Shown here piece by piece: positions 340 to 13,622 of a DNA stretch of 64,000 bases. A model generated the notes under the pieces. The model did no database searches. It saw only the letters and a program-made list of their open reading frames with translations, and was not told the DNA's origin. The stretch covers positions 62,001 to 126,000 of the IMG/VR virus record IMGVR_UViG_3300017917_000952; one strand, 5' to 3'. The first letter of the stretch is position 1, and every line of letters begins with the position of its first letter. A program made the translations under genes and the position numbers.

Positions 340-346
340 TATTTAT
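340..346 (-). promoter_or_regulatory. T4-late-like promoter motif ATAAATA
   Basis: 10 nt upstream of minus-strand CDS 1-330. Confidence 0.45.
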
Positions 347-716
347 GTTAAATTTAATGGTTAAATCAAAAATTCACAGGGCAACAGTTACAGATGGAAA
401 TCTTGCATACAAGGGAAGTATAACAGTAGATAGGAAGTTAATGAAGGCAGCAAATTTGCGACCTTTTGAATTCGTTCATGTTAACAATCTAAGCAATGCC
501 CAACACTGGGAAACTTATGTAATTCCTGGAAACGACGGAGAGATTATCCTAAACGGGCCACCTGCAAGATTATTTCAAAAGGGCGACAAAGTTGTTATAT
601 TAGGGTTCAGTTATCTATCAAACGACGAATTATCTACATTTGAGCACGTAGATGTAATGGTTACAGAAACTAACGAAATCACTAACGTGATCGTTTCAAA
701 AAGCGATTTTGAATAA
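345..716 (+). CDS. panD: Aspartate 1-decarboxylase (pyruvoyl-dependent)
   Basis: KSKIHRATVT, Gly-Ser autocleavage site (YKG/SITVD), ETYVI (Tyr58), NG..ARL, GDKVVI; SD-like AGAGGT upstream. Confidence 0.93.
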   Translation: MLNLMVKSKIHRATVTDGNLAYKGSITVDRKLMKAANLRPFEFVHVNNLSNAQHWETYVIPGNDGEIILNGPPARLFQKGDKVVILGFSYLSNDELSTFEHVDVMVTETNEITNVIVSKSDFE

Positions 717-719
717 ATA
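713..719 (+). promoter_or_regulatory. T4-late-like promoter motif ATAAATA
   Basis: Upstream of holin-like gene. Confidence 0.5.
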
Positions 720-736
720 AATTAACACTACACAAA

Positions 737-1270
737 ATGGAGCAACACATGTCCGAAGAAAAAATGAGCGAAAGCCAAAAGAAAAAAGAAGATTGGATGA
801 ACGCTAAATGGCGTCCTATGATGGGATGGATGTACATGGTCGTCTGTATGATGGACATGGTAATCTTTCCTGTTCTTTGGAGTCTATTGCAAACATTCGC
901 AAAAGTACCTCTAACCCAGTGGAACCCATTAACTCTACAGGGTGCTGGACTATTCCATATCGCTATGGGTGCAGTTCTAGGTATTGCAGCATTTGGAAGA
1001 ACACAAGAAAAATTAAACGGAGCAAACAATGGCGGCGCACAATTACCATCAAGCGGGTTTGCAGCATCTAGCGTACCTGCGTCAGGCGGTTTCGGAACAC
1101 CAGTTGCAGCAAGCGGCTTTGGGGCAGTCGGTAGCACAGTACCCGCGTATGGCGGAGGTGGCTTTGGAAGCGTATCTAGTACACCAACAGCGGACACAGG
1201 CTTCGGACAAGTTACCACAGGTTTCGGAGGAAAGCCTGCACCAATCCAACCTCCACAACCGTTAATTTAA
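737..1270 (+). CDS. 3-TM holin-like membrane protein (GTA_holin_3TM-like) with Gly/Phe-rich C-terminal tail
   Basis: KWRPMMGWMYMVVC...QWNPLTLQGAGLFHIAMGAVLGIAAFGRTQEK; hydrophobic segments then low-complexity tail. Confidence 0.6.
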   Translation: MEQHMSEEKMSESQKKKEDWMNAKWRPMMGWMYMVVCMMDMVIFPVLWSLLQTFAKVPLTQWNPLTLQGAGLFHIAMGAVLGIAAFGRTQEKLNGANNGGAQLPSSGFAASSVPASGGFGTPVAASGFGAVGSTVPAYGGGGFGSVSSTPTADTGFGQVTTGFGGKPAPIQPPQPLI

Positions 1271-1280
1271 GGAAACACTT

Positions 1281-1508
1281 ATGAAGAAAATTATTTTTGT
1301 TGCAGGTCTTGCCCTAAGCCTAGCATTCCCAACATTTGCAGCAGACGAAGGTCCGGGCAAAGGTGAAATGAAAACTGTTTGCCATCCAAAAAAAGATAAG
1401 GCCGGCAAAGAGGTAAAAGGTAAAGACGGAAAAGTTGTAGAAGAATGCAAGCAGATCAAGGTTCGCAAGAAACTAGAAGGAACAGAAATTCCTCCTGCTA
1501 AGAAGTAA
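1281..1508 (+). CDS. Small secreted Lys-rich protein with signal peptide and two Cys
   Basis: MKKIIFVAGLALSLAFPTFA-ADE signal peptide; AAGGA SD upstream. Confidence 0.7.
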   Translation: MKKIIFVAGLALSLAFPTFAADEGPGKGEMKTVCHPKKDKAGKEVKGKDGKVVEECKQIKVRKKLEGTEIPPAKK

Positions 1509-1512
1509 CTAC

Positions 1513-1541
1513 TTGACAAATCCAAAAAGGTATAGTAAAAT
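1513..1541 (+). promoter_or_regulatory. sigma70-like promoter for dnaJ-def-clpA
   Basis: TTGACA-N17-TAAAAT. Confidence 0.7.
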
Positions 1542-1556
1542 TTACTATACCTTTTT
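1524..1556. terminator. Perfect 16-bp inverted repeat (terminator and/or operator)
   Basis: AAAAAGGTATAGTAAA-A-TTTACTATACCTTTTT; A/T tracts on both sides. Confidence 0.55.
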
Positions 1557-1561
1557 CTATT

Positions 1562-2398
1562 ATGGCTGACCATTATCAAACACTCGGCGTAGACCGAACT
1601 GCCTCACAAGATGATATCAAAAAAGCGTTCCGCAAACTTGCGGCACAGCATCATCCTGACCGCGGCGGGGACACGGCCAAATTTCAAGAAATACAGGCTG
1701 CGTATGCTACACTTAGCGATCCAGAAAAACGGGCGCAGTACGACAACCCTACTCCACAATTTGAAGGCTTCCGACAATATGGCGGTATGCCTCCCGGGTT
1801 TGAAGATGTTATAAATCAAATGTTTGGAGGTAATCATCCGTTTAATGATATTTTTGGAAGACCGCATCCGACTCAACCTAAAAACAGAATATTAAACATC
1901 CAGACTACAATTACATTGGAAGAAGCATTCTCTGGTAAGGAGATGGTGGCGAACATCACTCTGCCCAGCGGCCGTGATCAAATTTTACAAATTAAAATTC
2001 CTGCCGGTATACAAGACGGTACCGTTCTACGTCTATCAGGTATGGGGGATGACAGTGTTAAGAATGCCCCACGAGGTGACATACATCTAACTGTTAGCAT
2101 ACAGCCTCATAAAATATTTCATAGAACAGGCGATGATCTAAATTGCACAATGAACTTAAACTGCATCGATGCAATGACTGGTAAAACTATCCAGATAGAA
2201 ACTGTAGATAAGAAAACACTCGAAGTTGCTGTTAAGGCCGGAACACAACACGGACAAATAATGAGTGCTGCCGGCTATGGTATGCCTAAGATGTCGGACA
2301 ATAGATTTCGGGGACGATTACTAATTCATATCAATATCGTAATCCCAGACAATCTGTCAGACGCACAAAAGCAGATACTCAAAGAACATTTTCAGTAA
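1562..2398 (+). CDS. dnaJ: DnaJ/CbpA-type co-chaperone (J domain plus C-terminal domain, no Zn finger)
   Basis: DHYQTLGV...AFRKLAAQHHPDRGG; G/F-rich linker; GDIHL and GRLLIHINIVIP C-terminal motifs. Confidence 0.92.
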   Translation: MADHYQTLGVDRTASQDDIKKAFRKLAAQHHPDRGGDTAKFQEIQAAYATLSDPEKRAQYDNPTPQFEGFRQYGGMPPGFEDVINQMFGGNHPFNDIFGRPHPTQPKNRILNIQTTITLEEAFSGKEMVANITLPSGRDQILQIKIPAGIQDGTVLRLSGMGDDSVKNAPRGDIHLTVSIQPHKIFHRTGDDLNCTMNLNCIDAMTGKTIQIETVDKKTLEVAVKAGTQHGQIMSAAGYGMPKMSDNRFRGRLLIHINIVIPDNLSDAQKQILKEHFQ

Positions 2399-2401
2399 AT
2401 A
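2395..2401 (+). promoter_or_regulatory. T4-late-like promoter motif GTAAATA
   Basis: Upstream of def, overlapping dnaJ stop. Confidence 0.4.
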
Positions 2402-2406
2402 CTTTT

Positions 2407-2901
2407 ATGAAGCAAGTTTTAAAATTTCCAAATGAATTACTTAGGGTTCAGGCTCCAGAATGGGATTTTGGTAATCCTCCTGTCGATCCTGCGACCTTAG
2501 AAAAAGAACTAATTGAAACCATGTTAGCCCACGACGGTATCGGGTTGGCAGCAACGCAGGTAGGATTGCTATATCGTGTATTTGTTATGGGATGGAGAGG
2601 CGCACCTGAAGAAGCAAAAGCATTTTTTAACCCCATAGTTGTTGCAACCGTAGACGAGGTTGAAGACCTCGAAGAAGGATGTTTGAGTTTTCCTGGAATA
2701 TATGTTAACATTAAACGTCCTAAAAAAATTCTTGCTAGATGGCAAAACTCAAAAGGAGAATGGGAAGAATCTGAATTCGAAGGATATAACTGTAAGTGCT
2801 TTCTACATGAACTAGATCATCTAGAAGGAATCGTTTTTCAAGACCGCGTAAGTTCCCTAAAGTGGGCCTTGGGCGTTAAAAAATCAAAAAAGAGGAAATA
2901 A
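2407..2901 (+). CDS. def: Peptide deformylase
   Basis: GIGLAATQVG, EGCLSFPG, HELDHLEG. Confidence 0.95.
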   Translation: MKQVLKFPNELLRVQAPEWDFGNPPVDPATLEKELIETMLAHDGIGLAATQVGLLYRVFVMGWRGAPEEAKAFFNPIVVATVDEVEDLEEGCLSFPGIYVNIKRPKKILARWQNSKGEWEESEFEGYNCKCFLHELDHLEGIVFQDRVSSLKWALGVKKSKKRK

Positions 2902-2907
2902 AACCAA

Positions 2908-5178
2908 ATGTTGGAACCGGATAAAGACTTAGAGAAAATTTTTGAACATGCTGTTCAACTAGCAAGTATGAACAAACACGAATACGTTACGCTAGAACAT
3001 TTTCTTTTTAGCATGTTAAGTAACGAACCGTTCGTGAAAGTATTAGAGGCATTTGGTACAGATGTAAAAACCTTTAGAGAAGACATCGAAAACTACATTG
3101 TCAACGAACTAAAAGACATTGCTAGTGAAACTGTTACTCGCCCTAAGAAAACAGTAAGTGTAGATCGAATGTTGAATCGTGCATTTACGCAGGTTCTGTT
3201 TAGCGGTCGTCAAATTATTAGCCCTGTTGACTGCTTTATTAGCCTATTCGGCGAAAAGAAAAGCCAGGCAAACTATTTCATAAGGAAAGCCAATATTGAT
3301 AAAGATATTTTCATCGACTTTATCAAGAAAGAAGTCTCTAAGAACGAAGAGGTAGAAGAAACCAAAGGTAGCAATCCTCAGATCGAAAGAATGTTGCTAC
3401 AGTTCTGCACTAACTTGAGCGCAAAGGCTAAGAGTAAAAAAATTGATCCGGTTATCGGTCGTGATAAAGAAATTGAAGAAATTCAATTAGTGCTTGCACG
3501 CCGTACAAAATCAAATGCTATTATGATCGGAGATCCCGGAGTAGGTAAGACCGCTATTGCAGAAGGTCTTGCTCGTAAGATCTACGAAGGCAATGTTCCT
3601 AAGTTTATTCAAGAGCACACAGTTTATAGTCTAGATATCAGCGGTATGCTAGCCGGTAGTAAATACCGCGGTGATTTTGAAGAACGCCTCAAGGCCGTTA
3701 TTAGTGCATTAGAGAAAAAAGGCAAGTGCATCTTGTTTATCGACGAAGCACATATGATGAATGGTGCAGGCGCTGCCGGTAACAGTAGCAATGATATGGC
3801 TAATATGCTCAAGAGCACACTAGGCAAAGGCACAATTAAGGTAATTGCTTCAACTACTTGGGACGAATATCGTAAACACTTCGAAAAAGATCGTGCGCTA
3901 ATGCGCCGATTCCAGCGTGTGGTAATTGACGAGCCCGATGAAGTAACTGCTATTAAGATTATTAAAGGTCTTAAGAAGTATTACGAAAAACATCACAGCG
4001 TTAAGATTACAAATCAAGCAGTTATTGATAGTGTCAAGTATAGTGTTAAGTATCTCAGTGATAAGAAATTACCTGACAAGGCTATCGACCTAATTGATTG
4101 TGCAAGTGCTCGCTTTAAACTTCGCAATGAAGAAGGCGGTATTGTTGACCACGATGAAATTCTATTCGAAGTTAGTCGTATTGCTAACATTCCGATTGAA
4201 GCCATTAACAGCAAAGAAACAAGTAACTTGCCTAATCTTGAAAAGAACATGAAGGCCAAGGTGTTTGGTCAAGAAACTGCTATTGATAATCTGTTAGACA
4301 AAGTGTTTATTGCACAGGCTGGCCTAAAAAATCCCAATAAGCCTGTAGGTAACTTCTTGTTTGTTGGCCCAACTGGTGTCGGTAAAACAGAAGCGGCAAA
4401 ACAACTAGCACAGAACCTAGGTATCAAATTAGTTCGCTTTGATATGAGTGAATATCAAGAACAGCATAGTGTTGCTAAATTCATCGGTGCGCCTCCAGGC
4501 TATGTAGGCTACGAGGATAACGCAGGATTGCTGATCACAAGTCTACAAGAAACACCAAACTGTGTGCTGTTGTTAGACGAAGTTGAAAAAGCACACCCAA
4601 GTGTGTTAACCGTTCTCCTACAAGTTATGGATAACGGCTTTGTTACAGGCAGCAATGGTAAGAAAGCAGATGCTCGCAATGCAATTATCATTATGACTTC
4701 TAACCTTGGTGCTGCCGATGCTGAAAAGAATGCAGTCGGTTTTGGTAGCCTAGAACGTGATAGCGATCCTAAAGATGCAATCAATAGGTTCTTTGCACCG
4801 GAATTCCGAAATCGTTTAGACGGTATCATTAGATTTGGCAAACTCGATCAGCAGACAATGATCAAGGTGGTGAAGAAATTTGTTGATGAACTTAATGCTC
4901 AGATTAAGGACAAAAATATTCATGTCAAACCAACTGTTGAAGCAGTTGAGTACTTGATCGAAAAAGGCTTTGATAGTAAAATGGGAGCTCGTCCGCTACA
5001 GAGATGCATTGATGAGATGATCAAGCGTCCCCTAAGTAAAGAGATTCTGTTTGGTAAACTATCAAATGGAGGCATTGTAGAAATCACAGTTGAAGATAAA
5101 TCTCTTAAACTCAATGTAGTAGACATTATGCCTATTAAAAAGAGCGAAGATGAAATTCAGGAAACTGACAACGCATAA
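2908..5178 (+). CDS. clpA: ClpA-type Clp protease ATP-binding subunit
   Basis: Clp N-domain (TLEHFL), two AAA+ modules (GDPGVGKT/FIDEAH; GPTGVGKT/LLDEVEKAH), no coiled-coil M domain, VGF ClpP-docking loop, MGARPL. Confidence 0.93.
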   Translation: MLEPDKDLEKIFEHAVQLASMNKHEYVTLEHFLFSMLSNEPFVKVLEAFGTDVKTFREDIENYIVNELKDIASETVTRPKKTVSVDRMLNRAFTQVLFSGRQIISPVDCFISLFGEKKSQANYFIRKANIDKDIFIDFIKKEVSKNEEVEETKGSNPQIERMLLQFCTNLSAKAKSKKIDPVIGRDKEIEEIQLVLARRTKSNAIMIGDPGVGKTAIAEGLARKIYEGNVPKFIQEHTVYSLDISGMLAGSKYRGDFEERLKAVISALEKKGKCILFIDEAHMMNGAGAAGNSSNDMANMLKSTLGKGTIKVIASTTWDEYRKHFEKDRALMRRFQRVVIDEPDEVTAIKIIKGLKKYYEKHHSVKITNQAVIDSVKYSVKYLSDKKLPDKAIDLIDCASARFKLRNEEGGIVDHDEILFEVSRIANIPIEAINSKETSNLPNLEKNMKAKVFGQETAIDNLLDKVFIAQAGLKNPNKPVGNFLFVGPTGVGKTEAAKQLAQNLGIKLVRFDMSEYQEQHSVAKFIGAPPGYVGYEDNAGLLITSLQETPNCVLLLDEVEKAHPSVLTVLLQVMDNGFVTGSNGKKADARNAIIIMTSNLGAADAEKNAVGFGSLERDSDPKDAINRFFAPEFRNRLDGIIRFGKLDQQTMIKVVKKFVDELNAQIKDKNIHVKPTVEAVEYLIEKGFDSKMGARPLQRCIDEMIKRPLSKEILFGKLSNGGIVEITVEDKSLKLNVVDIMPIKKSEDEIQETDNA

Positions 5179-6688: not shown

Positions 6689-9600
6689 ATGATCCTGAGA
6701 GAATTTTTTAAACGTACACTGTTAGAAGGTGGTAACTTAGAGATCGATGGCGCACAAGCACAACAGATCGAACTCAAGGTACATAATAGAGCATACATTG
6801 TACCTATCCTAAACACATTGTTAAATGCAATCAACGACGGCTTTCAACAAAGCCAGGGCGGGCCTCTATGGAGTGCAAAGGTATTAAAGAGTCGCAAGTA
6901 TCTTAGCGGGTCTAGCCTACACTTCTTCAATACAGATATCCCTGATGCAGAATTTGAGCGTGTAAAACCTAAAGTAGGTGACATCGACACGCAGATTAAT
7001 AAAGATGCAGAACCTCAATTAGCACAATGGTTGAATAGTGTTAAGGGGCAAGTTGTAGGAAATGCTACATTCCTAGGCTATAGTAGAGGCAACGAGCAAT
7101 ATAGCAGTCTATGGGAACTAACAGATCCTCCTATTAAAGTACAAATCGACTTTGAATTCGTTGACTATACAGAAAAAGATGAACCATCTGACTGGGCAGG
7201 CTTCAGTCACAGCAGTAGTTGGGACGACCTAAGCCAGGGTATCAAGGGTGTATTCCATAAGTTCTTAATTCAGGCATTTACAAAACTAACAACTCAAGAA
7301 TTCTTACTACGTAAAATGGTAGGTCGAGGAAAGGCTCGTGCCGAACAAGATGTTCCTACTACCGATAACATGTTCTCCTTTGCTGTTAGCAGTAAAGAGG
7401 GCGGTGGTCTACGTCCAAAATATGAGCCAGTAACAGACGAAAAAGGAAGGCCCCTTGTAGTTGACGGGCTTCCGGTCATGCGAGCACTTCCTGCAAGTGG
7501 ATACGAAAAAGATATTGGAAAAATTTTCCAAAGCGTATTTGGTAATAAAGTAAACGGCGCTGCACTAAAGAAGGTTCTTCCGAAGACATGGAGTTTCACC
7601 GGGCTATTAGATATCATGAACATGGTATTATCTCCCGAAGAGAAAGAACAAGTGTTCGACGGATTTATCGATAAACTGTTTGCTCCAGGCGCCCAGGGCC
7701 TATACAAAGGCGACCCTCAAAGAGATATGACTGAAAAGAATGCCGCAGTCAACTATGCACTTAAGGTATTAGGTATAACTCCTCCTAAGAACCTTGAGCA
7801 GATGCGTCAAGAGTATCTTAAAAATTATAAAGTAGCATCTGAAGGTGCTATGGGATTAGACCGCCCAGTTACAGAAGCAGACGAACCAGCAGTCAAGGCG
7901 CAACTGCGTAAAGGTATGCCTCACCTTCGTGATCTTAAACCTGCAGACTTCTTAGATTTAGTAGACGAACTACGTTCAGAAGGCGGTCGCTTTAAGTTAC
8001 AGAACATCCCTCTTAATGTTAAAGTCGACGGCTTTGGTGGAAGATTTGGTAAGGATTCGCAGGGTAGACCTTTTATGGGAACCAGCAGAACTGAACCAAA
8101 ATACAAAGCAGGGTTCTTAGATTATCATAAAGAAAAGGGAACTACTGATCCCGAAATCTTAGGTCGTGCGGCTAATTTCGACAAGTTATTTGAAGAAATG
8201 ATGAATGCGATTAAGATCGTAGACAGTAAATTAGGCCCAGACTTTTTGACAGACAAACAAGTAACCTGTGAAGTGTTGTTCTTGCCGTTCGCTACCCAAA
8301 CTGAAGAAGGCAAATTAAAATTTGTAGGTATCGAATACGATCAATTACCACAGGGTGTTGATCTTGTGCTAGTACCATATCGTATTGTAGAAGCAAGCAC
8401 TGGTAAAGATTTACCCGACGAGGCTGCACAACAACTTGCCAATCTTGGACAGCACGGTAGTGTTATGTTCATGAGCAATAGACTTATTCAGAAAGACGGG
8501 TTAGATGTTACTGAAATTATCAACCCGTTAGACAATTTAGAAGAACTAAAGAAAATTGTTAGCGACACTGCCGGCAAGAGAGACCGAGCTAGTTTAGAAC
8601 TTCGTAGGGAAGTTGAAGCAAAATTAAAACCAGTGCAGATCGCTCTAGAAAAAGCAATCGATGAAGATCCTAACATCATTGGCAAGGACAAACTAGGACA
8701 AGATTACGAAGGCATTGTTATTAACAGTCGACTAGGTCCTATCAAGGTCACCAGTCAACGACAAAAAGATATTATTGCACAGAAAAATGCTGCCAAGGCC
8801 GCAGCTCGTGCAGACGCCGGAAGAACTAACACCAACAAAACTGCTGTGGTTGCCATTGGAAGTTTCGTAGGCCACAAAGGTCACGAAGAACTCTGGGATT
8901 ATACTGTAAAGAAAGCGGCCGAATTGGGCGGAGATCCATATTTGTTTATGGGCAATGCTGTCGGCAAAGATGATCCTATTCCAGTTGATGTTAAACTACA
9001 GACCTGGCATAAGATGTATCCCAAGTATGCTAAAAACATTAGTGGCACAATGGCAGGTGGTACACTGATGCAAAAGATCAAACACGAGTTGATCAATCCG
9101 TTACCAGGTAAGCCTCCTCGCTATGATAATATTGTTATCATGGTTGGCGAGGATCAGGCCGGTATGAATATTGCACAAGCACTGATGAAGGCCGTTAATA
9201 AGTTTCCGGGCTATGAGCATGTTAAAGTTAGCCTAGAGCCAACACCTCGTGGTACAGGTATGAGCTTTACCAAACTACGCAACGTGTTAAAAGATCCAAA
9301 CGCTACGCCAGAACAGCAATATGCCTTATGGAGCCAAGGGTTCGACGAAGCAAAATTAGGCAAAGACTGGATTTTACACTTAATGGACATTACGAGAAAA
9401 GGTATGGGTATTACACAAAAACCAACACAGCCAGCGGCGCCTGTTCCGGTAGCAGAAACAAGACTATTCAATGCACTAGTTCGACCTTCGTTGAATGAAG
9501 ACCACAGTACAGTCGGTGGATGGGGTAAGGGTGCATACGATACCTACTCGGGCACCAGACACGGTAGGGGTGTAGCAGAAATGGACAAGAGTCAACCCAG

Positions 9601-10630
9601 CCACGGTCGTGATGGCAAGATTAGCCACAGCACCTACGGTTCAAGAGACAAAGGCGGTTCTACAGGACCTGATCGAACCGCTAAAGCAACTACGGCTGAC
9701 AAGATGATGAAACACGCTCATGACGTTATGATGAAGTCGATGAGCGATGCTGACAAGGTGAAAAAGGGATGGCGCAATCCTAACATGAAAGAGCAAGGTA
9801 TCGAAGAATACGGTGATACTGCCAAGGGTCAGAAGATGTTGACTAAAGTCCAGAAACGTGCTGTAGATAGAGTAGTATCTAAGAAAGCAGATACTGATCC
9901 AGCATACGCAAAAAAGAATAAAGCCACTGCTGACCGTGCTTGGGATAGAATGAAAGACAAGGATCTGGCAGAAGGCTGGAAAGAAAAAGTCGGAGCCGCC
10001 GCATTAGCAGGAGCAGTGGCTACAGGTGCCGGTGCTAATACTCCAAAGGTTCCACTCGACAAGGCAATTCAACAGGCAACTGCGGTATATAACATAAACA
10101 AGGCTGTTAAAAAACATAAAGAAAAAGAAGCCGAGAAGCGTAAGGCGGGCGAGAAAGAAGTTAAAGAGTCCGATAGTCCAGCAATGGCACAAACTGCTCG
10201 TCGCTTAACAGATCCTAAAGACGGTGCTGTTGCAAAACTACGTGCTGCTGGAGATAAGCGTAGAGAAGATCAATTAAAGAGTAGAGATATTGCCAAGAAG
10301 AACGAAGCAATGCTACCTAAGAGTGCTTTTTCTGGCAGCGACAAAAACAAATTAGGTTCAGCAGGACAATGGAAGAACACAGGCCCTAGTAAGAACCGCC
10401 CAGCAAGAGCAGGCGACCTAGTAGGTGGTGCTGAAGAAAGTATTGAGAAAGAAGAAAAGCAACGCCTAGATCCTAAGTGCTGGAAAGGCTATCGTAAAGC
10501 AGGCACTAAGATGAAGGGCGGTGTTCGAGTAAACAACTGCGTTCCAGTTAGCGAAGATGTTGAAAACATTTTTGCCGCTCTTATCGATAAGATTATCGTA
10601 AATGAAGCAATACAAAATAACAAGCGCTGA
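6689..10630 (+). CDS. Large multidomain protein: Pol-beta-type NTase + ligase-like adenylation domain + HxGH cytidylyltransferase-like domain + modular C-terminal tail
   Basis: SGSS...GDID...QID; KVDG...CEVL...EGIVI...IKV; GHKGH...MVGED...MSFTKLR; start MILREFF at 6689 after SD AAGGTAGG. Confidence 0.7.
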   Translation: MILREFFKRTLLEGGNLEIDGAQAQQIELKVHNRAYIVPILNTLLNAINDGFQQSQGGPLWSAKVLKSRKYLSGSSLHFFNTDIPDAEFERVKPKVGDIDTQINKDAEPQLAQWLNSVKGQVVGNATFLGYSRGNEQYSSLWELTDPPIKVQIDFEFVDYTEKDEPSDWAGFSHSSSWDDLSQGIKGVFHKFLIQAFTKLTTQEFLLRKMVGRGKARAEQDVPTTDNMFSFAVSSKEGGGLRPKYEPVTDEKGRPLVVDGLPVMRALPASGYEKDIGKIFQSVFGNKVNGAALKKVLPKTWSFTGLLDIMNMVLSPEEKEQVFDGFIDKLFAPGAQGLYKGDPQRDMTEKNAAVNYALKVLGITPPKNLEQMRQEYLKNYKVASEGAMGLDRPVTEADEPAVKAQLRKGMPHLRDLKPADFLDLVDELRSEGGRFKLQNIPLNVKVDGFGGRFGKDSQGRPFMGTSRTEPKYKAGFLDYHKEKGTTDPEILGRAANFDKLFEEMMNAIKIVDSKLGPDFLTDKQVTCEVLFLPFATQTEEGKLKFVGIEYDQLPQGVDLVLVPYRIVEASTGKDLPDEAAQQLANLGQHGSVMFMSNRLIQKDGLDVTEIINPLDNLEELKKIVSDTAGKRDRASLELRREVEAKLKPVQIALEKAIDEDPNIIGKDKLGQDYEGIVINSRLGPIKVTSQRQKDIIAQKNAAKAAARADAGRTNTNKTAVVAIGSFVGHKGHEELWDYTVKKAAELGGDPYLFMGNAVGKDDPIPVDVKLQTWHKMYPKYAKNISGTMAGGTLMQKIKHELINPLPGKPPRYDNIVIMVGEDQAGMNIAQALMKAVNKFPGYEHVKVSLEPTPRGTGMSFTKLRNVLKDPNATPEQQYALWSQGFDEAKLGKDWILHLMDITRKGMGITQKPTQPAAPVPVAETRLFNALVRPSLNEDHSTVGGWGKGAYDTYSGTRHGRGVAEMDKSQPSHGRDGKISHSTYGSRDKGGSTGPDRTAKATTADKMMKHAHDVMMKSMSDADKVKKGWRNPNMKEQGIEEYGDTAKGQKMLTKVQKRAVDRVVSKKADTDPAYAKKNKATADRAWDRMKDKDLAEGWKEKVGAAALAGAVATGAGANTPKVPLDKAIQQATAVYNINKAVKKHKEKEAEKRKAGEKEVKESDSPAMAQTARRLTDPKDGAVAKLRAAGDKRREDQLKSRDIAKKNEAMLPKSAFSGSDKNKLGSAGQWKNTGPSKNRPARAGDLVGGAEESIEKEEKQRLDPKCWKGYRKAGTKMKGGVRVNNCVPVSEDVENIFAALIDKIIVNEAIQNNKR

Positions 10631-10865
10631 TCTAAATCCAAAGCAAGATGACGATTGTTATCTTGCACCGGATGACCCTATACACGATCTAATGCCTGCT
10701 AGTATGATGGGCGGGCTAGGCAGTATGGAAGCACTTGCTAATTATAAAGCAACTATGCGACAGCCTAATTTAGGTAGCAACAAGGGACAAATACAGCGAG
10801 AACAGGGCATAAAGCCCGGAACCGAAGCGTGGTTTAAACTTTGGTTTGGAAAAGATAATAAATAA
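10602..10865 (+). CDS. Hypothetical protein
   Basis: 87-aa ORF, ends GIKPGTEAWFKLWF. Confidence 0.65.
   Translation: MKQYKITSADLNPKQDDDCYLAPDDPIHDLMPASMMGGLGSMEALANYKATMRQPNLGSNKGQIQREQGIKPGTEAWFKLWFGKDNK
10858..10864 (+). promoter_or_regulatory. T4-late-like promoter motif ATAAATA
   Basis: Upstream of dps. Confidence 0.45.
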
Positions 10866-10871
10866 CGTATC

Positions 10872-11318
10872 ATGGAACAGTTACAACAACTTGCTAAGAT
10901 TGCATTTGCTAGTGAATTTAGTTTTGCACTAAAGGCACAGAATTTTCATTGGAACGTAGAAGGTAGCGATTTCTTCGAGTACCACGCACTATTTGAAAAA
11001 ATTTATGACGAAGTTTATGGAGTTATCGACGACTTTGCAGAAAACATTCGTAAATTAAAGACCTATACACCCGCAAGTCTAAGTCGATTCAGTATGCTAT
11101 CAAGGATTGACGATGAAACTGAAATCATTCCACTTGAAGCGATGGTAAAAGAATTACTTGTAGATAACGAGCGTATGATTGTTATCTTAAAGAAAACCTA
11201 CGATGCTGCTGAGGCTGCTGGCAAGCACGGATTTAGCAATTTCTTAGCAGAGCGCATGGATGCACACGAAAAACACGGTTGGATGTTACGTGCAAGTAGC
11301 AAGGGCGGAATACAATGA
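10872..11318 (+). CDS. dps: Dps/ferritin-like DNA-protecting protein
   Basis: NFHWNVEG..F.EYHALFEKIY...IDDFAENIR; C-terminal HEKHGWML. Confidence 0.88.
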   Translation: MEQLQQLAKIAFASEFSFALKAQNFHWNVEGSDFFEYHALFEKIYDEVYGVIDDFAENIRKLKTYTPASLSRFSMLSRIDDETEIIPLEAMVKELLVDNERMIVILKKTYDAAEAAGKHGFSNFLAERMDAHEKHGWMLRASSKGGIQ

Positions 11319-11692
11319 GAGCAACTGAGTTTGTTACAGAATCACATCGTGTAATCGGCGGCGTCAAAAAACGTCAAGCGGCCGTTCAGAAAAGTGTTCA
11401 AAAGTCAAGAGATAAAGGCGGTTATGATAGAACTGCACATATGAATAGACTATGGATGGCTACTGCCATGGCCGACGGCAAGAGTCAAAAACCCGTAGAC
11501 ATGGACGCCTACAGTTGGATCGAAAAATATAATACGCAACATCCGTATACCGAAGAAGAATACAATATGTTCCGTCAGGCAGAAGCAACAGTTCCTACAG
11601 ATAGCAAAAATGTTATTTCTTGGAGTAAAAGCGAAGAGCCAAAAGATACTTATACAACAAGTCCTGTAAGTAATTGGATGAACAAAAAATGA
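11315..11692 (+). CDS. Hypothetical protein with MRATEF leader (probable head-internal protein)
   Basis: 125-aa ORF, MRATEFVTES start. Confidence 0.65.
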   Translation: MRATEFVTESHRVIGGVKKRQAAVQKSVQKSRDKGGYDRTAHMNRLWMATAMADGKSQKPVDMDAYSWIEKYNTQHPYTEEEYNMFRQAEATVPTDSKNVISWSKSEEPKDTYTTSPVSNWMNKK

Positions 11693-13119
11693 CAAACGAA
11701 TTCAAAGTAAAAAAATATAAAGACGCAACTGTCTATACTTTAGAAAGTGCATCTGCTGGTGCTACTGGTGCAGGCGCAATTGCAACAGCATCGAGCAGTA
11801 TCGGAGGCGTTCGTCGTAGAGATAATCTAATTGCCCAAGAGAGCGATACTATTAAAGTACCAGTTACACAAAAGCCTCGCCAAGGACCTTTGCGTCCTCA
11901 AACTGGTGCTGGACAACATCGTGACAAAAAGAAAGAACAAAAGCAAGGCAAAGAAAAGCATCGTAAACCATACATGGAAGAATTAAAAACTCGCCTAGCC
12001 GCTTTAAAAAATAAACTAGGCGAAAACAGCGAGCTTGCACAACAGATGATGGCTCTTGCAAGGTCTAGAGGAATGAATCCTCGAATTGCCGGTACTCCGG
12101 AACAAGAGCGCGAACGCACACAACAAATGATGGCGCAACGTGCAAAAGATAGAGAAGAAAAAGATCGACAATCTGCAAGCGATGATGCTGCTAAATTACC
12201 AGAACTAAAAGCAGAATACGATGCACTGTTTAAAAAGTATAATAGTCTAGGTGGCAGAAACTGGCAGTATGCCGACCGTGAGCAGAATTTGTCAGATAGC
12301 GAACGTGAAGCACGTAGCATAGAGCCAAAATTAAATCAATTGGCTGGTAGAATTGCTCGTGCAGAAAAATCACAAGGTGTAGCAGAAGGCGCAGAGTTCG
12401 GTGCTTACTATAGCGAACAAGTTGCACAACAAATTTTTAACAAGCGTCAGGATATCACATCTGAAGACGAAGTATTGAATCAAGCATACCACATTGTGGC
12501 CGACGAGCAAGGACAAAGACGTGCTCGTTATATGTTTAACTACGATGAAGACTTCCCAAGTGATGTTGTATCTAATTACTTCCATTTACAGAAGCAAGGT
12601 GTAGCAGAAGGTGATGCATATTTTACACATTTAGAAAACATGCTCAACGAAGATTGGCAAAAAGTTAATCGTCGAGATAAGACAGATGGCATGAGCCGAA
12701 AGGCAGTTAAGGCCTACCGTCGAGAGAATCCCGGTAGCAAATTAAAGACCGCTGTAACTACAAAGCCTAGCAAACTAAAGAAAGGAGGCAAGGCTGCAAA
12801 GCGCCGCAAGAGTTTCTGTGCTCGCATGAAGGGCATGAAGAAAGCCCATGCCAGTGCTAAGACTAAGCGCAACCCGGATAGTCCAATTAATAAGGCCTTA
12901 CGCCGTTGGAACTGCGAGGAAGATGCATACATGAACAGTCTAAACCAACAGGTCCTTGAGAAATTAAATCCTCAAGCAGATGTAGACGTATGGGTGCAGG
13001 ATTTTCAAAAAGCAGATCCTAACAAGTACAAACAATTTAAAAATAAAACTCCTCAGAAAAAAGCGCAGATGGCGGTAGCAGCACACTATGCCGCTAACGA
13101 ACCAAGTAAGAAAAAATGA
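11689..13119 (+). CDS. Modular protein with QGVAEG repeats and a basic RRKSFCARM...ALRRWNC module
   Basis: ORF track 11674-13119; probable start MTNEFK at 11689; repeated QGVAEG. Confidence 0.7.
   Translation: MTNEFKVKKYKDATVYTLESASAGATGAGAIATASSSIGGVRRRDNLIAQESDTIKVPVTQKPRQGPLRPQTGAGQHRDKKKEQKQGKEKHRKPYMEELKTRLAALKNKLGENSELAQQMMALARSRGMNPRIAGTPEQERERTQQMMAQRAKDREEKDRQSASDDAAKLPELKAEYDALFKKYNSLGGRNWQYADREQNLSDSEREARSIEPKLNQLAGRIARAEKSQGVAEGAEFGAYYSEQVAQQIFNKRQDITSEDEVLNQAYHIVADEQGQRRARYMFNYDEDFPSDVVSNYFHLQKQGVAEGDAYFTHLENMLNEDWQKVNRRDKTDGMSRKAVKAYRRENPGSKLKTAVTTKPSKLKKGGKAAKRRKSFCARMKGMKKAHASAKTKRNPDSPINKALRRWNCEEDAYMNSLNQQVLEKLNPQADVDVWVQDFQKADPNKYKQFKNKTPQKKAQMAVAAHYAANEPSKKK
12373..12611 (+). 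repeat. 17-nt direct repeat CAAGGTGTAGCAGAAGG flanking an in-frame 222-nt module
   Basis: Copies at 12373-12389 and 12595-12611; 12-nt core GGTGTAGCAGAA also at 9569-9580. Confidence 0.8.
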
Positions 13120-13622
13120 GATTCGTTGAGTTCAAAGCAAGCGATTATGAAATACATGATCGTCCGAAACTGGATAAGATCTTGCTAGAACTCTGTCACC
13201 ATATTTTGGAAGGTCAGCGTATTGATTCAAACAAATACGGGATGGTTGCGGCCTGTGTCTTAGACCCCGAAAACCGCAAAGTCTACGGTGTTAACGAGGC
13301 GGCCGGAGACAATAAAAGACGCCACGCAGAACGTGTGGCCATAGATAGATATGAGGAAAACTATGGCCAAGTACCAAAAGGCAGTATTATCATTACAACC
13401 CTAAGTCCTTGTAATGAAGACCATACTGAAATGGCCGATGGTAGATACGGTGAGAGTTGTACAGATCTAGTAAACTCGTCAAACTGTCGCAAGGTCTATT
13501 GCGGATATATAGATCCAACGCAGCACAACGACCACGAAGAATATACCTTAGAAGAAACACAAGAAGGTAAAATCAAAGAACTCTGCAAACGATTCGCAGA
13601 CACTTTTCTGAACGCAAAATAA
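13116..13622 (+). CDS. Zn-dependent cytidine/dCMP deaminase-fold protein
   Basis: HAE...TLSPC-x15-C...VYCG; 'GMVAACVLD' first strand. Confidence 0.8.
   Translation: MRFVEFKASDYEIHDRPKLDKILLELCHHILEGQRIDSNKYGMVAACVLDPENRKVYGVNEAAGDNKRRHAERVAIDRYEENYGQVPKGSIIITTLSPCNEDHTEMADGRYGESCTDLVNSSNCRKVYCGYIDPTQHNDHEEYTLEETQEGKIKELCKRFADTFLNAK

What the first reader, a model, noticed from the sequence alone, without database searches (positions are those of the whole stretch)
9450..13119. GVAE-bounded cassette modules: probable prohead-protease cleavage sites that also act as recombination joints
Seen: the C-terminal third of the 1.3-kaa protein and the 481-aa protein are strings of short unrelated modules separated by hydrophobic-X-E motifs (GVAE, DLAE, EVKE, SLNE, MLNE, YTLE, PVSE). 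QGVAEG is encoded by an identical 17-nt repeat (12373, 12595) flanking an in-frame 74-codon insert, and the same 12-nt core recurs at 9569 in the other gene. Known: T4 gp21 and phiKZ gp175 cleave head proteins after X-X-E. Inference: these are polyproteins packaged in the head and cut into small injected effectors. Synonymous-level identity of the linker DNA suggests modules are swapped by recombination at the linker, a diversification system for injected peptides.
Basis: partly seen in the sequence, partly recalled or inferred. Interest (0 to 1): 0.75.

Follow-up and report, generated by a model that had tools for sequence, protein, structure and literature searches.

The report
In-frame cassette joint in phage polyproteins
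Two genes of an uncultured freshwater jumbo T4-like phage are built from small protein modules joined by a QGVAEG linker whose DNA is conserved base for base across hundreds of phages; modules are demonstrably swapped at this linker, and it probably also marks where the head protease cuts the protein into separate packaged pieces.

Summary
CAAGGTGTAGCAGAAGG occurs exactly twice in the 206.7-kb contig (12373, 12595), 74 codons apart. Its 12-nt core recurs at 9569.

The recombination reading is strongly supported. QGVAEG is a family-wide joint. In related phages it is encoded by GGTGTGGCGGAA in about 65-70% of instances, although GTG and GCG are rare codons there. Homology between proteins breaks exactly at the motif (98.5% of pairs are decoupled, against 24-53% at control positions). 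Near-identical phages differ by 71- and 106-codon cassettes bounded by the 17-nt repeat. The window's cassette recurs elsewhere as an isolated repeat-to-repeat 239-nt match and folds as a confident four-helix unit.

The cleavage and packaging reading is inferred, not shown, but it is well supported:
- The contig encodes a T4 gp21-type prohead protease.
- V-A-E fits that protease's L/I-X-E rule.
- Many linker proteins start with a T4 CTS-like tag (MRAxEFIxE).
- The same modules begin in the same register after the tag's Glu or after the linker's Glu.
- Tat-like signal peptides sit directly behind internal linkers.
- The P0002 leader resembles the capsid protein's maturation site.

No virion data exist. 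I rate this a new variant of known kinds (T4 internal proteins, polyvalent proteins, PeSL shuffling) and of high interest.

The parts
6689..10630 (+). P0001, a gene of about 1313 aa. It has conserved enzyme-like N-terminal two thirds, a variable cassette region and a conserved C-terminal end.
   Evidence: ORF and translation. The likely start is ATG 6689, which lies behind an AAGGTAGGTG ribosome-binding site. Residues 17-383 resemble standalone proteins of cultured T4-like phages.
6689..6727 (+). CTS-like N-terminus MILREFFKRTLLE, followed by the conserved GGNLE.
   Evidence: Orthologues begin MFLRDFLRKNLLE and MKLLELFRRSGEAINE before the same GGNLE. For comparison, T4 has MKTYQEFIAE and MAKINELLRE. 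This is a resemblance only.
9450..10456 (+). Variable cassette region of P0001.
   Evidence: DNA homology with the syntenic relatives L021, L004, L034 and L023-27 stops at 9292-9487 and resumes at 10172-10304. Single modules in this region match unrelated proteins. They also show depth spikes in an estuary metagenome.
9569..9580 (+). Linker core GGTGTAGCAGAA (GVAE). It ends the module WGKGAYDTYSGTRHGRGVAE (9521-9580).
   Evidence: The same module, also ending in GVAE, occurs in P0008, P0011, P0012, P0022 and others.
9962..9976 (+). DLAEG, a degenerate linker at a module boundary.
   Evidence: In other metagenome contigs the flanking modules are joined by canonical linker DNA. Loose ends read ...CAAGGTGTGGCGGAA at 9952 and ...GAAGGTGTAGCG at 9971.
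10457..10546 (+). Cys-rich module KQRLDPKCWKGY...VNNCVP.
   Evidence: It is 70-90% identical to the same module in about 30 unrelated mosaic proteins. Elsewhere it follows either a linker or an N-terminal tag.
11315..11692 (+). A 125-aa ORF that starts with the canonical tag MRATEFVTE, immediately upstream of P0002.
   Evidence: Homologous tagged ORFs of about 125 aa occur in many related loci.
11689..13119 (+). P0002 (476 aa from ATG 11689): leader, helical region, cassette, DUF6321 module and C-terminal tail.
11689..11979 (+). Conserved leader of about 100 aa, ending in KPYME. Residues 21-49 (11734-11820) resemble the major capsid protein around its putative maturation site.
   Evidence: More than 50 proteins of 267-897 aa share the leader and then diverge. 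The match to the capsid protein is 16/29 identities, BLASTP E 2e-6. DNA homology with several relatives ends at 11981.
12373..12389 (+). Linker copy 1, CAAGGTGTAGCAGAAGG (QGVAEG).
   Evidence: The AF2 model has a pLDDT dip here.
12390..12594 (+). Cassette module of about 70 aa between the two linkers.
   Evidence: Window 12373-12611 is an isolated 239-nt match to L015-17 (84.5%) and L011 (82%). AF2 folds it as a four-helix unit with pLDDT 89-96. The closest relative, P0007, lacks it.
12595..12611 (+). Linker copy 2, CAAGGTGTAGCAGAAGG (QGVAEG).
   Evidence: Homology with L007 and L005 begins at 12594 and 12596. The AF2 model has a pLDDT dip here.
12652..12915 (+). DUF6321 module (DWQKVN...RRWNC), preceded by MLNE.
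   Evidence: Pfam PF19846, 39.9 bits against a cut-off of 28.5. Protein HSP starts cluster at residues 321-326. The same module follows a tag or a linker in the same register elsewhere.

Best explanation
P0001 and P0002 are mosaic 'cargo polyproteins' of a freshwater jumbo phage with T4-type head morphogenesis. Small autonomous modules (median spacing 76 aa, more than 200 module families in the sample) are strung together by the hexapeptide QGVAEG.

Shown: the linker is a conserved 17-18-nt DNA word. The canonical form is CAAGGTGTGGCGGAAGG; this genome carries the variant with GTA GCA. It is the exact point at which modules are exchanged, inserted and deleted between and within phage genomes. 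The likely route is recombination or template switching on the short identity, which keeps the reading frame.

Inferred: the proteins are taken into the prohead through an N-terminal signal. In many family members this is a T4 CTS-like tag, in P0002 a capsid-protein-like leader, and in P0001 a CTS-like amphipathic start. The gp21-family prohead protease then cuts after the Glu of V-A-E and of other h-X-E sites. The modules would thus become separate small internal proteins that travel with the DNA into the next host.
For: Evidence for the joint:
- GVAE is coded by GGTGTGGCGGAA in 62 of 89 instances and in 76 of 120 further instances. In the same ORFs GTG makes up 15-20% of Val codons and GCG 7% of Ala codons.
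- The nucleotide logo shows about 18 conserved bases and no conservation in the flanks.
- The N-terminal tag, equally conserved as a peptide, varies freely at synonymous sites. This control shows that the linker's nucleotide conservation is special.
- Of pairs of instances alike on one side of the motif, 255 of 259 are unlike on the other side. At offsets of 20-40 aa the figure is 24-53%.
- About 20% of high-identity DNA HSP ends lie at the motif, against 2.8% for random positions.
- L108 and L037 (96.7% and 92.7% identical flanks) differ by a 71-codon cassette. L158 and L195 differ by a 106-codon cassette. In both cases the HSPs overlap by 16-17 nt at the repeat.
- Window 12373-12611 recurs as an isolated unit in other loci.
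- The exact 17-mer is found in at least 120 IMG/VR stretches, often 2-7 copies per ORF.

Evidence for cleavage and packaging:
- PF03420 (Peptidase_S77) scores 92.5 bits at G000:136157-136585, inside a T4-like head module.
- gp21 cuts after L/I-X-E (PMC9026906).
- 22 of 64 linker proteins carry a CTS-like N-terminus, against 55 of 938 control ORFs, p 1e-10. T4 ipII and ipIII begin MKTYQEFIAE, read here from the T4 record.
- 36 tag/linker pairs show the same module starting at the same residue after the Glu.
- Tat-like signals lie directly behind internal linkers, for example at residue 1151 of the P0001 orthologue in L021.
- The P0002 leader resembles the capsid protein's maturation site, E 2e-6.
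- AF2 places pLDDT dips exactly on both linkers, around a confident domain.
Against: - There are no virion proteomics, no cleavage assay and no cultured relative that carries the leader or the linker.
- The genes sit in a tightly packed run with Dps-like, dCMP-deaminase and DNA-polymerase genes. This looks early or middle rather than late, although T4 ip genes also lie outside the head cluster.
- P0002 lacks the canonical tag, and the start of P0001 only resembles it.
- Seventeen nucleotides is short for efficient homologous recombination. Why rare codons persist is not explained by recombination alone.
- The modelled protease-peptide complex gave no answer.
- Many module boundaries lack GVAE.
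- Sampling is phylogenetically non-independent.
Confidence: 0.6

Rival explanations
1. The recombination joint is real, but there is no proteolysis. QGVAEG is only a flexible interdomain linker, and the proteins act as intact multidomain 'polyvalent' proteins made in the infected cell, packaged or not.
For: - The linker falls in low-pLDDT dips between folded units.
- The genomic context is replication and nucleotide metabolism.
- There is no direct evidence of cleavage.
- Domain content (ParB_N, GNAT, GH19, NT5C, nucleotidyltransferase) recalls polyvalent proteins (PMC5512222).
Against: - Modules begin in the same register after the tag's Glu and after the linker's Glu.
- Tat-like signals 600-1150 residues deep could not work unless they were freed.
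- The linker ends in V-A-E, and a gp21-type protease is encoded.
- A simple flexible linker would not need a fixed hexapeptide.
Confidence: 0.2
2. The nucleotide conservation serves the mRNA or translation. The candidates are a ribosome pause from the rare codons GUG GCG plus the Shine-Dalgarno-like AGGUG/GAAGG, timing co-translational folding or cleavage of each module. Recombination at the site would then be a by-product.
For: - Rare codons are specifically retained.
- The word contains AGGUG and AAGG, which are complementary to the anti-Shine-Dalgarno sequence (read from the sequence; inference).
- It is always on the coding strand and in frame.
Against: - This genome and the L057-61 group use the common codons GTA GCA in every copy, so rarity is not essential.
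- There is no conserved start codon or hairpin in the flanks.
- Indels and homology breaks at the word show that DNA exchange really occurs there.
- Being in frame is also usual for chance bacterial occurrences of this GNN-rich word.
Confidence: 0.1
3. Cleavage occurs at the linker but by another agent, such as a host protease or an unrecognised phage protease acting in the cytoplasm. The pieces would then act in the producing cell rather than being packaged and injected.
For: - The context looks early or middle.
- Tat-like signals would make sense for export from the producing cell.
- A chaperone/AAA+ cluster lies just upstream.
Against: - The N-terminal tags resemble the T4 capsid targeting sequence.
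- The P0002 leader resembles the capsid protein's maturation site.
- No other protease was seen in the linker proteins.
Confidence: 0.1

Closest known systems
T4 internal proteins IPI/IPII/IPIII and Alt: capsid targeting sequence plus gp21 cleavage
   Same: - Both have a gp21-family protease.
- The N-terminal tag M(R/K)AxEF(I/V)xE is very like T4 MKTYQEFIAE.
- Cleavage-type motifs are hydrophobic-X-Glu in both.
- The cargo is diverse, small and fast-evolving, sharing only the signal (PMC3012670, PMC9026906).
- The genes lie outside the head cluster.
- T4 ipII and ipIII also share their CTS-coding DNA base for base.
   Different: - In T4 each internal protein is its own gene with one N-terminal signal. 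Here many modules are concatenated in one ORF by an internal repeated linker.
- That linker is conserved at nucleotide level across hundreds of phages.
- Packaging and cleavage are untested here.
Polyvalent proteins of phages and conjugative elements (Iyer et al. 2017, PMC5512222)
   Same: Both are large mosaic phage proteins with many unrelated domains, rapid domain shuffling, and proposed delivery with the DNA followed by processing into units.
   Different: - The hallmark domains (MuF, ArdC, the MPTase autopeptidase, methylases) were not found. There was only a weak LPD1 hit and one ParB_N hit.
- Processing here would be by the prohead protease at a fixed linker.
- No conserved linker, in peptide or DNA, is described in that paper ('linker' occurs 0 times).
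PeSL mobile regulatory cassettes in T4-type phages (PMC2839356, PMC4122927)
   Same: Both are short conserved DNA words, repeated through T4-like genomes, that mark the ends of insertions, deletions and replacements between close relatives.
   Different: PeSLs are intergenic promoter and stem-loop units that shuffle whole genes. This word is intragenic, in frame and translated, has no stem-loop, and shuffles protein modules.
phiKZ/SPN3US inner-body and ejection proteins processed at S/A-X-E (PMC5694885, PMC9026906)
   Same: These are giant phages with many head-internal proteins cut after Glu at several sites by a gp21-like protease.
   Different: There is no sequence relation, different P3 preference, and no repeated nucleotide-conserved linker or cassette exchange has been reported.
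Shufflons, integron cassettes and polymorphic-toxin cassettes (own knowledge; the last is also mentioned in PMC5512222)
   Same: Repeated short DNA sites allow in-frame or cassette-wise exchange of protein ends under arms-race selection.
   Different: Those systems use a dedicated recombinase and specific sites (sfx, attC) or homologous pre-toxin regions. No recombinase was linked here, the repeats are direct, and the exchanged units are internal modules.

Membership tests
T4-type capsid-targeted, gp21-processed internal proteins | The genome encodes a gp21-family (Peptidase_S77) prohead protease. | tested here: met
   PF03420 scores 92.5 bits (cut-off 27) at G000:C1:136157-136585, between the portal/scaffold genes and the capsid-protein gene.
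T4-type capsid-targeted, gp21-processed internal proteins | An N-terminal capsid targeting sequence of about 10 aa ending in hydrophobic-X-Glu. | tested here: inconclusive
   A canonical tag is present in the wider linker family (22 of 64 against 55 of 938 controls) and in window ORF 11315-11692. P0001 begins with a look-alike. P0002 has instead a 100-aa leader with a capsid-protein-like segment. Targeting itself was not tested.
T4-type capsid-targeted, gp21-processed internal proteins | Cleavage C-terminal to Glu at L/I-X-E. | not testable with these tools
   V-A-E fits the motif (PMC9026906). The register evidence and the internal Tat-like signals argue for cleavage. The modelled complex gave no answer.
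T4-type capsid-targeted, gp21-processed internal proteins | The protein is present in the virion. | not testable with these tools
   The phage is uncultured, and no cultured phage carries the leader or the linker.
Polyvalent proteins (Iyer et al. 2017) | Two to 15 unrelated domains in one phage polypeptide, with extensive mosaicism. | tested here: met
Polyvalent proteins (Iyer et al. 2017) | Hallmark domains, including an embedded MPTase-type peptidase for processing. | tested here: not met
   Pfam scans of P0001, P0002 and 64 linker proteins found none. The only related hits were LPD1 at E 0.05 in one homologue and ParB_N in one.
PeSL-type shuffling motifs | An intergenic promoter plus stem-loop unit. 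| tested here: not met
   The word is intragenic and in frame, and its flanks are not conserved, so there is no hairpin.
PeSL-type shuffling motifs | Indel and replacement boundaries between close relatives coincide with the motif. | tested here: met
DUF6321 (PF19846) | Match above Pfam's gathering score. | tested here: met
   P0002 residues 334-412 score 39.9 bits against a cut-off of 28.5.
Site-specific cassette systems (shufflon, integron) | A dedicated recombinase linked to the sites. | not tested
   None was noticed among the neighbours annotated. No systematic search was made.

The most novel reading that the evidence does not exclude
The 17-18-nt word may be a dedicated, selected in-frame cassette-exchange site, a protein-level analogue of integron or exon shuffling. 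Freshwater jumbo phages would use it to draw on a shared pool of hundreds of small capsid-delivered modules. The same six codons would double as the prohead-protease cut site, so any module pasted in at the DNA level is automatically released as a separate injected protein. Its nucleotide conservation would be maintained by selection for exchangeability or by a sequence-specific enzyme not yet identified.
Probability: 0.3. Interest if true: 0.9.

Novelty: new variant of a known kind. Interest (0 to 1): 0.8.

Why it matters
If the inferred half holds, this is a simple rule for a large class of unannotated phage proteins. The tag or leader would mean the protein goes into the head, and QGVAE would mean it is cut there. 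More than 7,000 database proteins matched P0002, and they could then be parsed into discrete candidate injected factors such as anti-defence or takeover proteins.

The shown half gives a rare, clean example of in-frame module shuffling at a defined DNA word in viruses. Its breakpoints are visible at single-base resolution in natural populations.

It also makes a long-standing question testable: how T4-like phages diversify their internal-protein arsenal.

Tried and rejected
- Megablast of 9000-13500 against cultured phages found no match. tblastn with the leader found none. The DUF6321 module is common in cyanophages and pelagiphages, but there it lacks linkers.
- The predicted complex of the protease with a linker peptide gave no answer and is not used as evidence.
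- Foldseek of the P0002 model against the PDB found nothing below E 0.3. phmmer of P0001 against PDB sequences found nothing. The atlas search returned only DUF6321 clusters.
- The T4 late-promoter core TATAAATA is not enriched in the contig (7 plus 3 copies, against about 13 expected per strand), so expression timing could not be inferred.
- The scan of bacterial genomes for the 17-mer gave at least 120 hits. Their median GC is 65% and they lie in ordinary genes. That is chance level for 596 Gb, and it gave no host clue.
- An assembly artefact is rejected, because identical bridging contigs occur in other runs. No cassette-less joint at 12373/12595 was seen in those runs.
- Internal translation starts at the GTG of the linker, or a conserved hairpin, are rejected. 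The Shine-Dalgarno-like spacing is too short and the flanks are not conserved.
- The literature searches found no phage paper holding QGVAEG, DUF6321 or the tag.
Full report
**Setting.** The window is bases 62001-126000 of a 206,751-bp IMG/VR viral contig that CheckV rates 58% complete. Relatives whose capsid proteins are 78-80% identical are complete genomes of 338-360 kb, so this is a jumbo phage. Public runs that hold it are pond, freshwater, estuary and wastewater metagenomes. Head morphogenesis is T4-like. Portal, an acidic core protein, a Peptidase_S77 (gp21-family) protease, a scaffold and the major capsid protein lie at G000:132899-139035, about 7-13 kb beyond the end of the window. 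The two genes in the finding lie elsewhere, among a ClpB-like AAA+ ATPase, a Dps/ferritin-like gene, a dCMP-deaminase-like gene and a family-B DNA polymerase.

**Observation.** The 17-nt word CAAGGTGTAGCAGAAGG is exact at 12373 and 12595. These are the only two copies in the contig, 74 codons apart and in frame as QGVAEG. The core GGTGTAGCAGAA recurs at 9569 in the 1.3-kaa gene, giving 3 copies against 0.28 expected. Under this genome's codon usage, two independent codings would be identical with P about 0.013, and three GVAE codings with P about 0.001. Contigs from three other runs are identical to the window and bridge both repeats, so the arrangement is real.

**The linker is a family-wide joint.**
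- P0002 matched more than 7,300 database proteins, typically as pieces 80-96% identical over only 20-35% of its length and joined to different partners.
- 66 of the 122 proteins examined (P0001, P0002 and the 120 listed hits) contain (Q/E/K)GVAE(G/A/E/D), often 2-5 times, with different sequence on either side.
- Among pairs of motif instances at least 60% alike over 12 aa on one side, 255 of 259 are unlike on the other side. At control positions 20-40 aa away only 24-53% are decoupled.
- The C-terminal third of P0001 shares three such modules with this family.
- Syntenic relatives match the window up to 9292-9487 and again from 10172-10304, but not between. In P0002 they match the leader and the C-terminal part but not the middle.
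- The closest relative, P0007, is about 95% identical in the leader and 96.5% identical from residue 312 on, with an unrelated middle.

**The DNA of the linker is conserved beyond the peptide.**
- In 80 related loci, GVAE is coded by GGTGTGGCGGAA in 62 of 89 distinct instances. In the same ORFs GTG accounts for 15% of Val codons and GCG for 7% of Ala codons.
- In a second sample, 76 of 120 further instances use the same word.
- The logo shows about 18 conserved bases and none in the flanks, across loci of 34-47% GC.
- As a control, the N-terminal tag described below is equally conserved as a peptide but varies freely at synonymous sites.
- In 596 Gb of bacterial genomes it occurs only at about chance level, in ordinary GC-rich genes.
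- This genome carries the variant GTA GCA in all three copies. That variant is rare elsewhere.

**Recombination at the word is visible directly.**
- Window 12373-12611, exactly repeat to repeat, is an isolated 239-nt match to L015-17 (84.5%) and L011 (82%). Homology with L007 and L005 starts at 12594 and 12596.
- About 20% of internal ends of DNA matches at 85% identity or more lie at the word, against 2.8% for random positions.
- L108 and L037, whose flanks are 96.7% and 92.7% identical, differ by a 71-codon cassette. L158 and L195 differ by a 106-codon cassette. In both cases the two matches overlap by 16-17 nt on the repeat, which is the signature of exchange between direct repeats.
- In an estuary metagenome, single modules of the window (9835-10168, 10336-10502, 12507-12840) are present at 90% identity or more in many other contigs. 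Their continuations read canonical linker DNA next to window 9952 and 10451.
- The window's DLAEG (9962-9976) sits where another genome has ...GVAE.

**Structure.** An AF2 model of P0002 (mean pLDDT 62) gives a disordered leader, a helical region and a confident four-helix unit (pLDDT 89-96) that is exactly the cassette. Dips below 50 fall on both linkers. No structural neighbour was found.

**Is the linker a protease site? This is inference.** The gp21 protease cuts after L/I-X-E, and T4 internal proteins share only a 10-aa capsid targeting sequence that gp21 removes (PMC9026906, PMC3012670). I read MKTYQEFIAE (ipII, ipIII), MAKINELLRE (gp24) and ...FLTE|AEIGG (gp23) from the T4 record itself. 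In the phages that carry the linker:
- Many ORFs begin M(R/K)AxEF(I/V)xE. I found 88 distinct tagged ORFs. 22 of 64 linker proteins carry such a start, against 55 of 938 other ORFs, p 1e-10.
- Window ORF 11315-11692 starts MRATEFVTE. P0001 and its orthologues start with a look-alike that ends ..LLE before a conserved GGNLE.
- Most tellingly, the same modules begin at the same residue either right after the tag's Glu or right after the linker's Glu. Examples are DUF6321, the WSQKYKSSINC module, the SPAQQAAIAIA module and the RLDPKCW module; there are 36 such pairs.
- Tat-like signal peptides follow internal linkers hundreds of residues deep, including residue 1151 of the P0001 orthologue in L021. 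They could only function once freed.
- The conserved P0002 leader, shared by more than 50 proteins that then diverge, contains ..YTLE|SASAGATGAGAIATA... This is 16/29 identical (E 2e-6) to the capsid protein around its putative maturation site ..YLAE|SATSGATSAGNIATL...
- Beyond GVAE, Glu is enriched at the first residue of internal homology (20% against 7% background). A hydrophobic-X-E motif precedes 31% of such starts, against 15% of random positions. That sample is dominated by a few modules. As a class the motif is not denser in P0001 and P0002 than in the proteome.

**Weaknesses.**
- There are no virion or cleavage data.
- The modelled protease-peptide complex gave no answer.
- The gene context looks early or middle, though T4 ip genes also lie among non-structural genes.
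- Seventeen nucleotides is short for homologous recombination.
- Retention of rare codons is not fully explained. A translational role remains possible but is weakened by genomes, including this one, that use common codons throughout.
- Counts are not phylogenetically independent.

**Comparison with what is known.**
- The system works like T4 internal proteins (tag, gp21-type cut, diverse cargo), but it concatenates many cargoes behind an internal linker.
- It resembles polyvalent proteins (PMC5512222) in mosaicism, but it lacks their hallmark domains and their autopeptidase.
- It resembles PeSL-mediated shuffling (PMC2839356, PMC4122927) in having a repeated DNA word at indel ends, but the word is translated and in frame.
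- I found no paper that describes the linker, the tag in these phages, or DUF6321.

**Verdict.**
- The recombination joint is shown.
- Cleavage and packaging are likely but untested.
- I rate it a new variant of known kinds and of high interest.

Noticed in passing
Loci L004-L206 (for example L102, L120, L143, L180); window 11315-11341: Dozens of otherwise unrelated ORFs in these jumbo phages start with the nonapeptide M(R/K)AxEF(I/V)xE, which is very like the T4 capsid targeting sequence. It is conserved as a peptide only; its codons vary freely.
   Followed up: partly
L021 (1439-aa P0001 orthologue, residue 1151); L184 residue 605; L014 residue 131; L011 residue 671: Twin-arginine (Tat)-like signal peptides (..RRGFLKGLGAA..) lie directly behind internal linkers or h-X-E sites, deep inside long proteins.
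   Followed up: partly
window 11734-11820 and G000:137848-139035: The P0002 leader resembles the N-terminal region of the major capsid protein across its putative maturation cleavage site (16/29 identities, E 2e-6). The leader is shared by more than 50 mosaic proteins.
   Followed up: partly
window 345-5178: A proteostasis-like cluster lies upstream of P0001. The ClpB/ClpA-like double AAA+ ATPase (2908-5178) is confirmed by Pfam. From reading their N-termini only, the other ORFs look like a J-domain protein (1562-2398), a peptide deformylase (2407-2901) and an aspartate decarboxylase (345-716).
   Followed up: no
window 37491-58973, minus strand: A run of very large ORFs (3953, 1145, 757 and 1136 aa). 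They are probably structural or fibre proteins. They were not examined.
   Followed up: no
window 10872-11318: A Dps/ferritin-like gene (PF00210, E 7e-19) sits between the two mosaic genes and is syntenic in relatives.
   Followed up: no
G000:128755-129462 and 127159-128745 (beyond the window): Two ORFs next to the head module begin MKINELLVE.. (compare T4 gp24 MAKINELLRE) and MNLSSLLSKIDSLE... They are candidate core or internal proteins. tblastn of the first against cultured phages found nothing.
   Followed up: partly
window 9835-10168, 10336-10502 and 12507-12840, in run X4: In one estuary metagenome, single modules have summed contig depth 10-30 times that of neighbouring parts of the same genes. 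The modules therefore circulate at 90% nucleotide identity or more in many genomes of one community.
   Followed up: partly
T4 record NC_000866, ipII and ipIII (L331): The first 32 nt of T4 ipII and ipIII, which encode the CTS, are identical base for base. This is a small-scale parallel to the nucleotide-conserved linker.
   Followed up: no
whole contig G000: The T4 late-promoter core TATAAATA is not enriched (10 copies on both strands, against about 13 expected per strand). Late transcription signals in this phage probably differ from those of T4.
   Followed up: no
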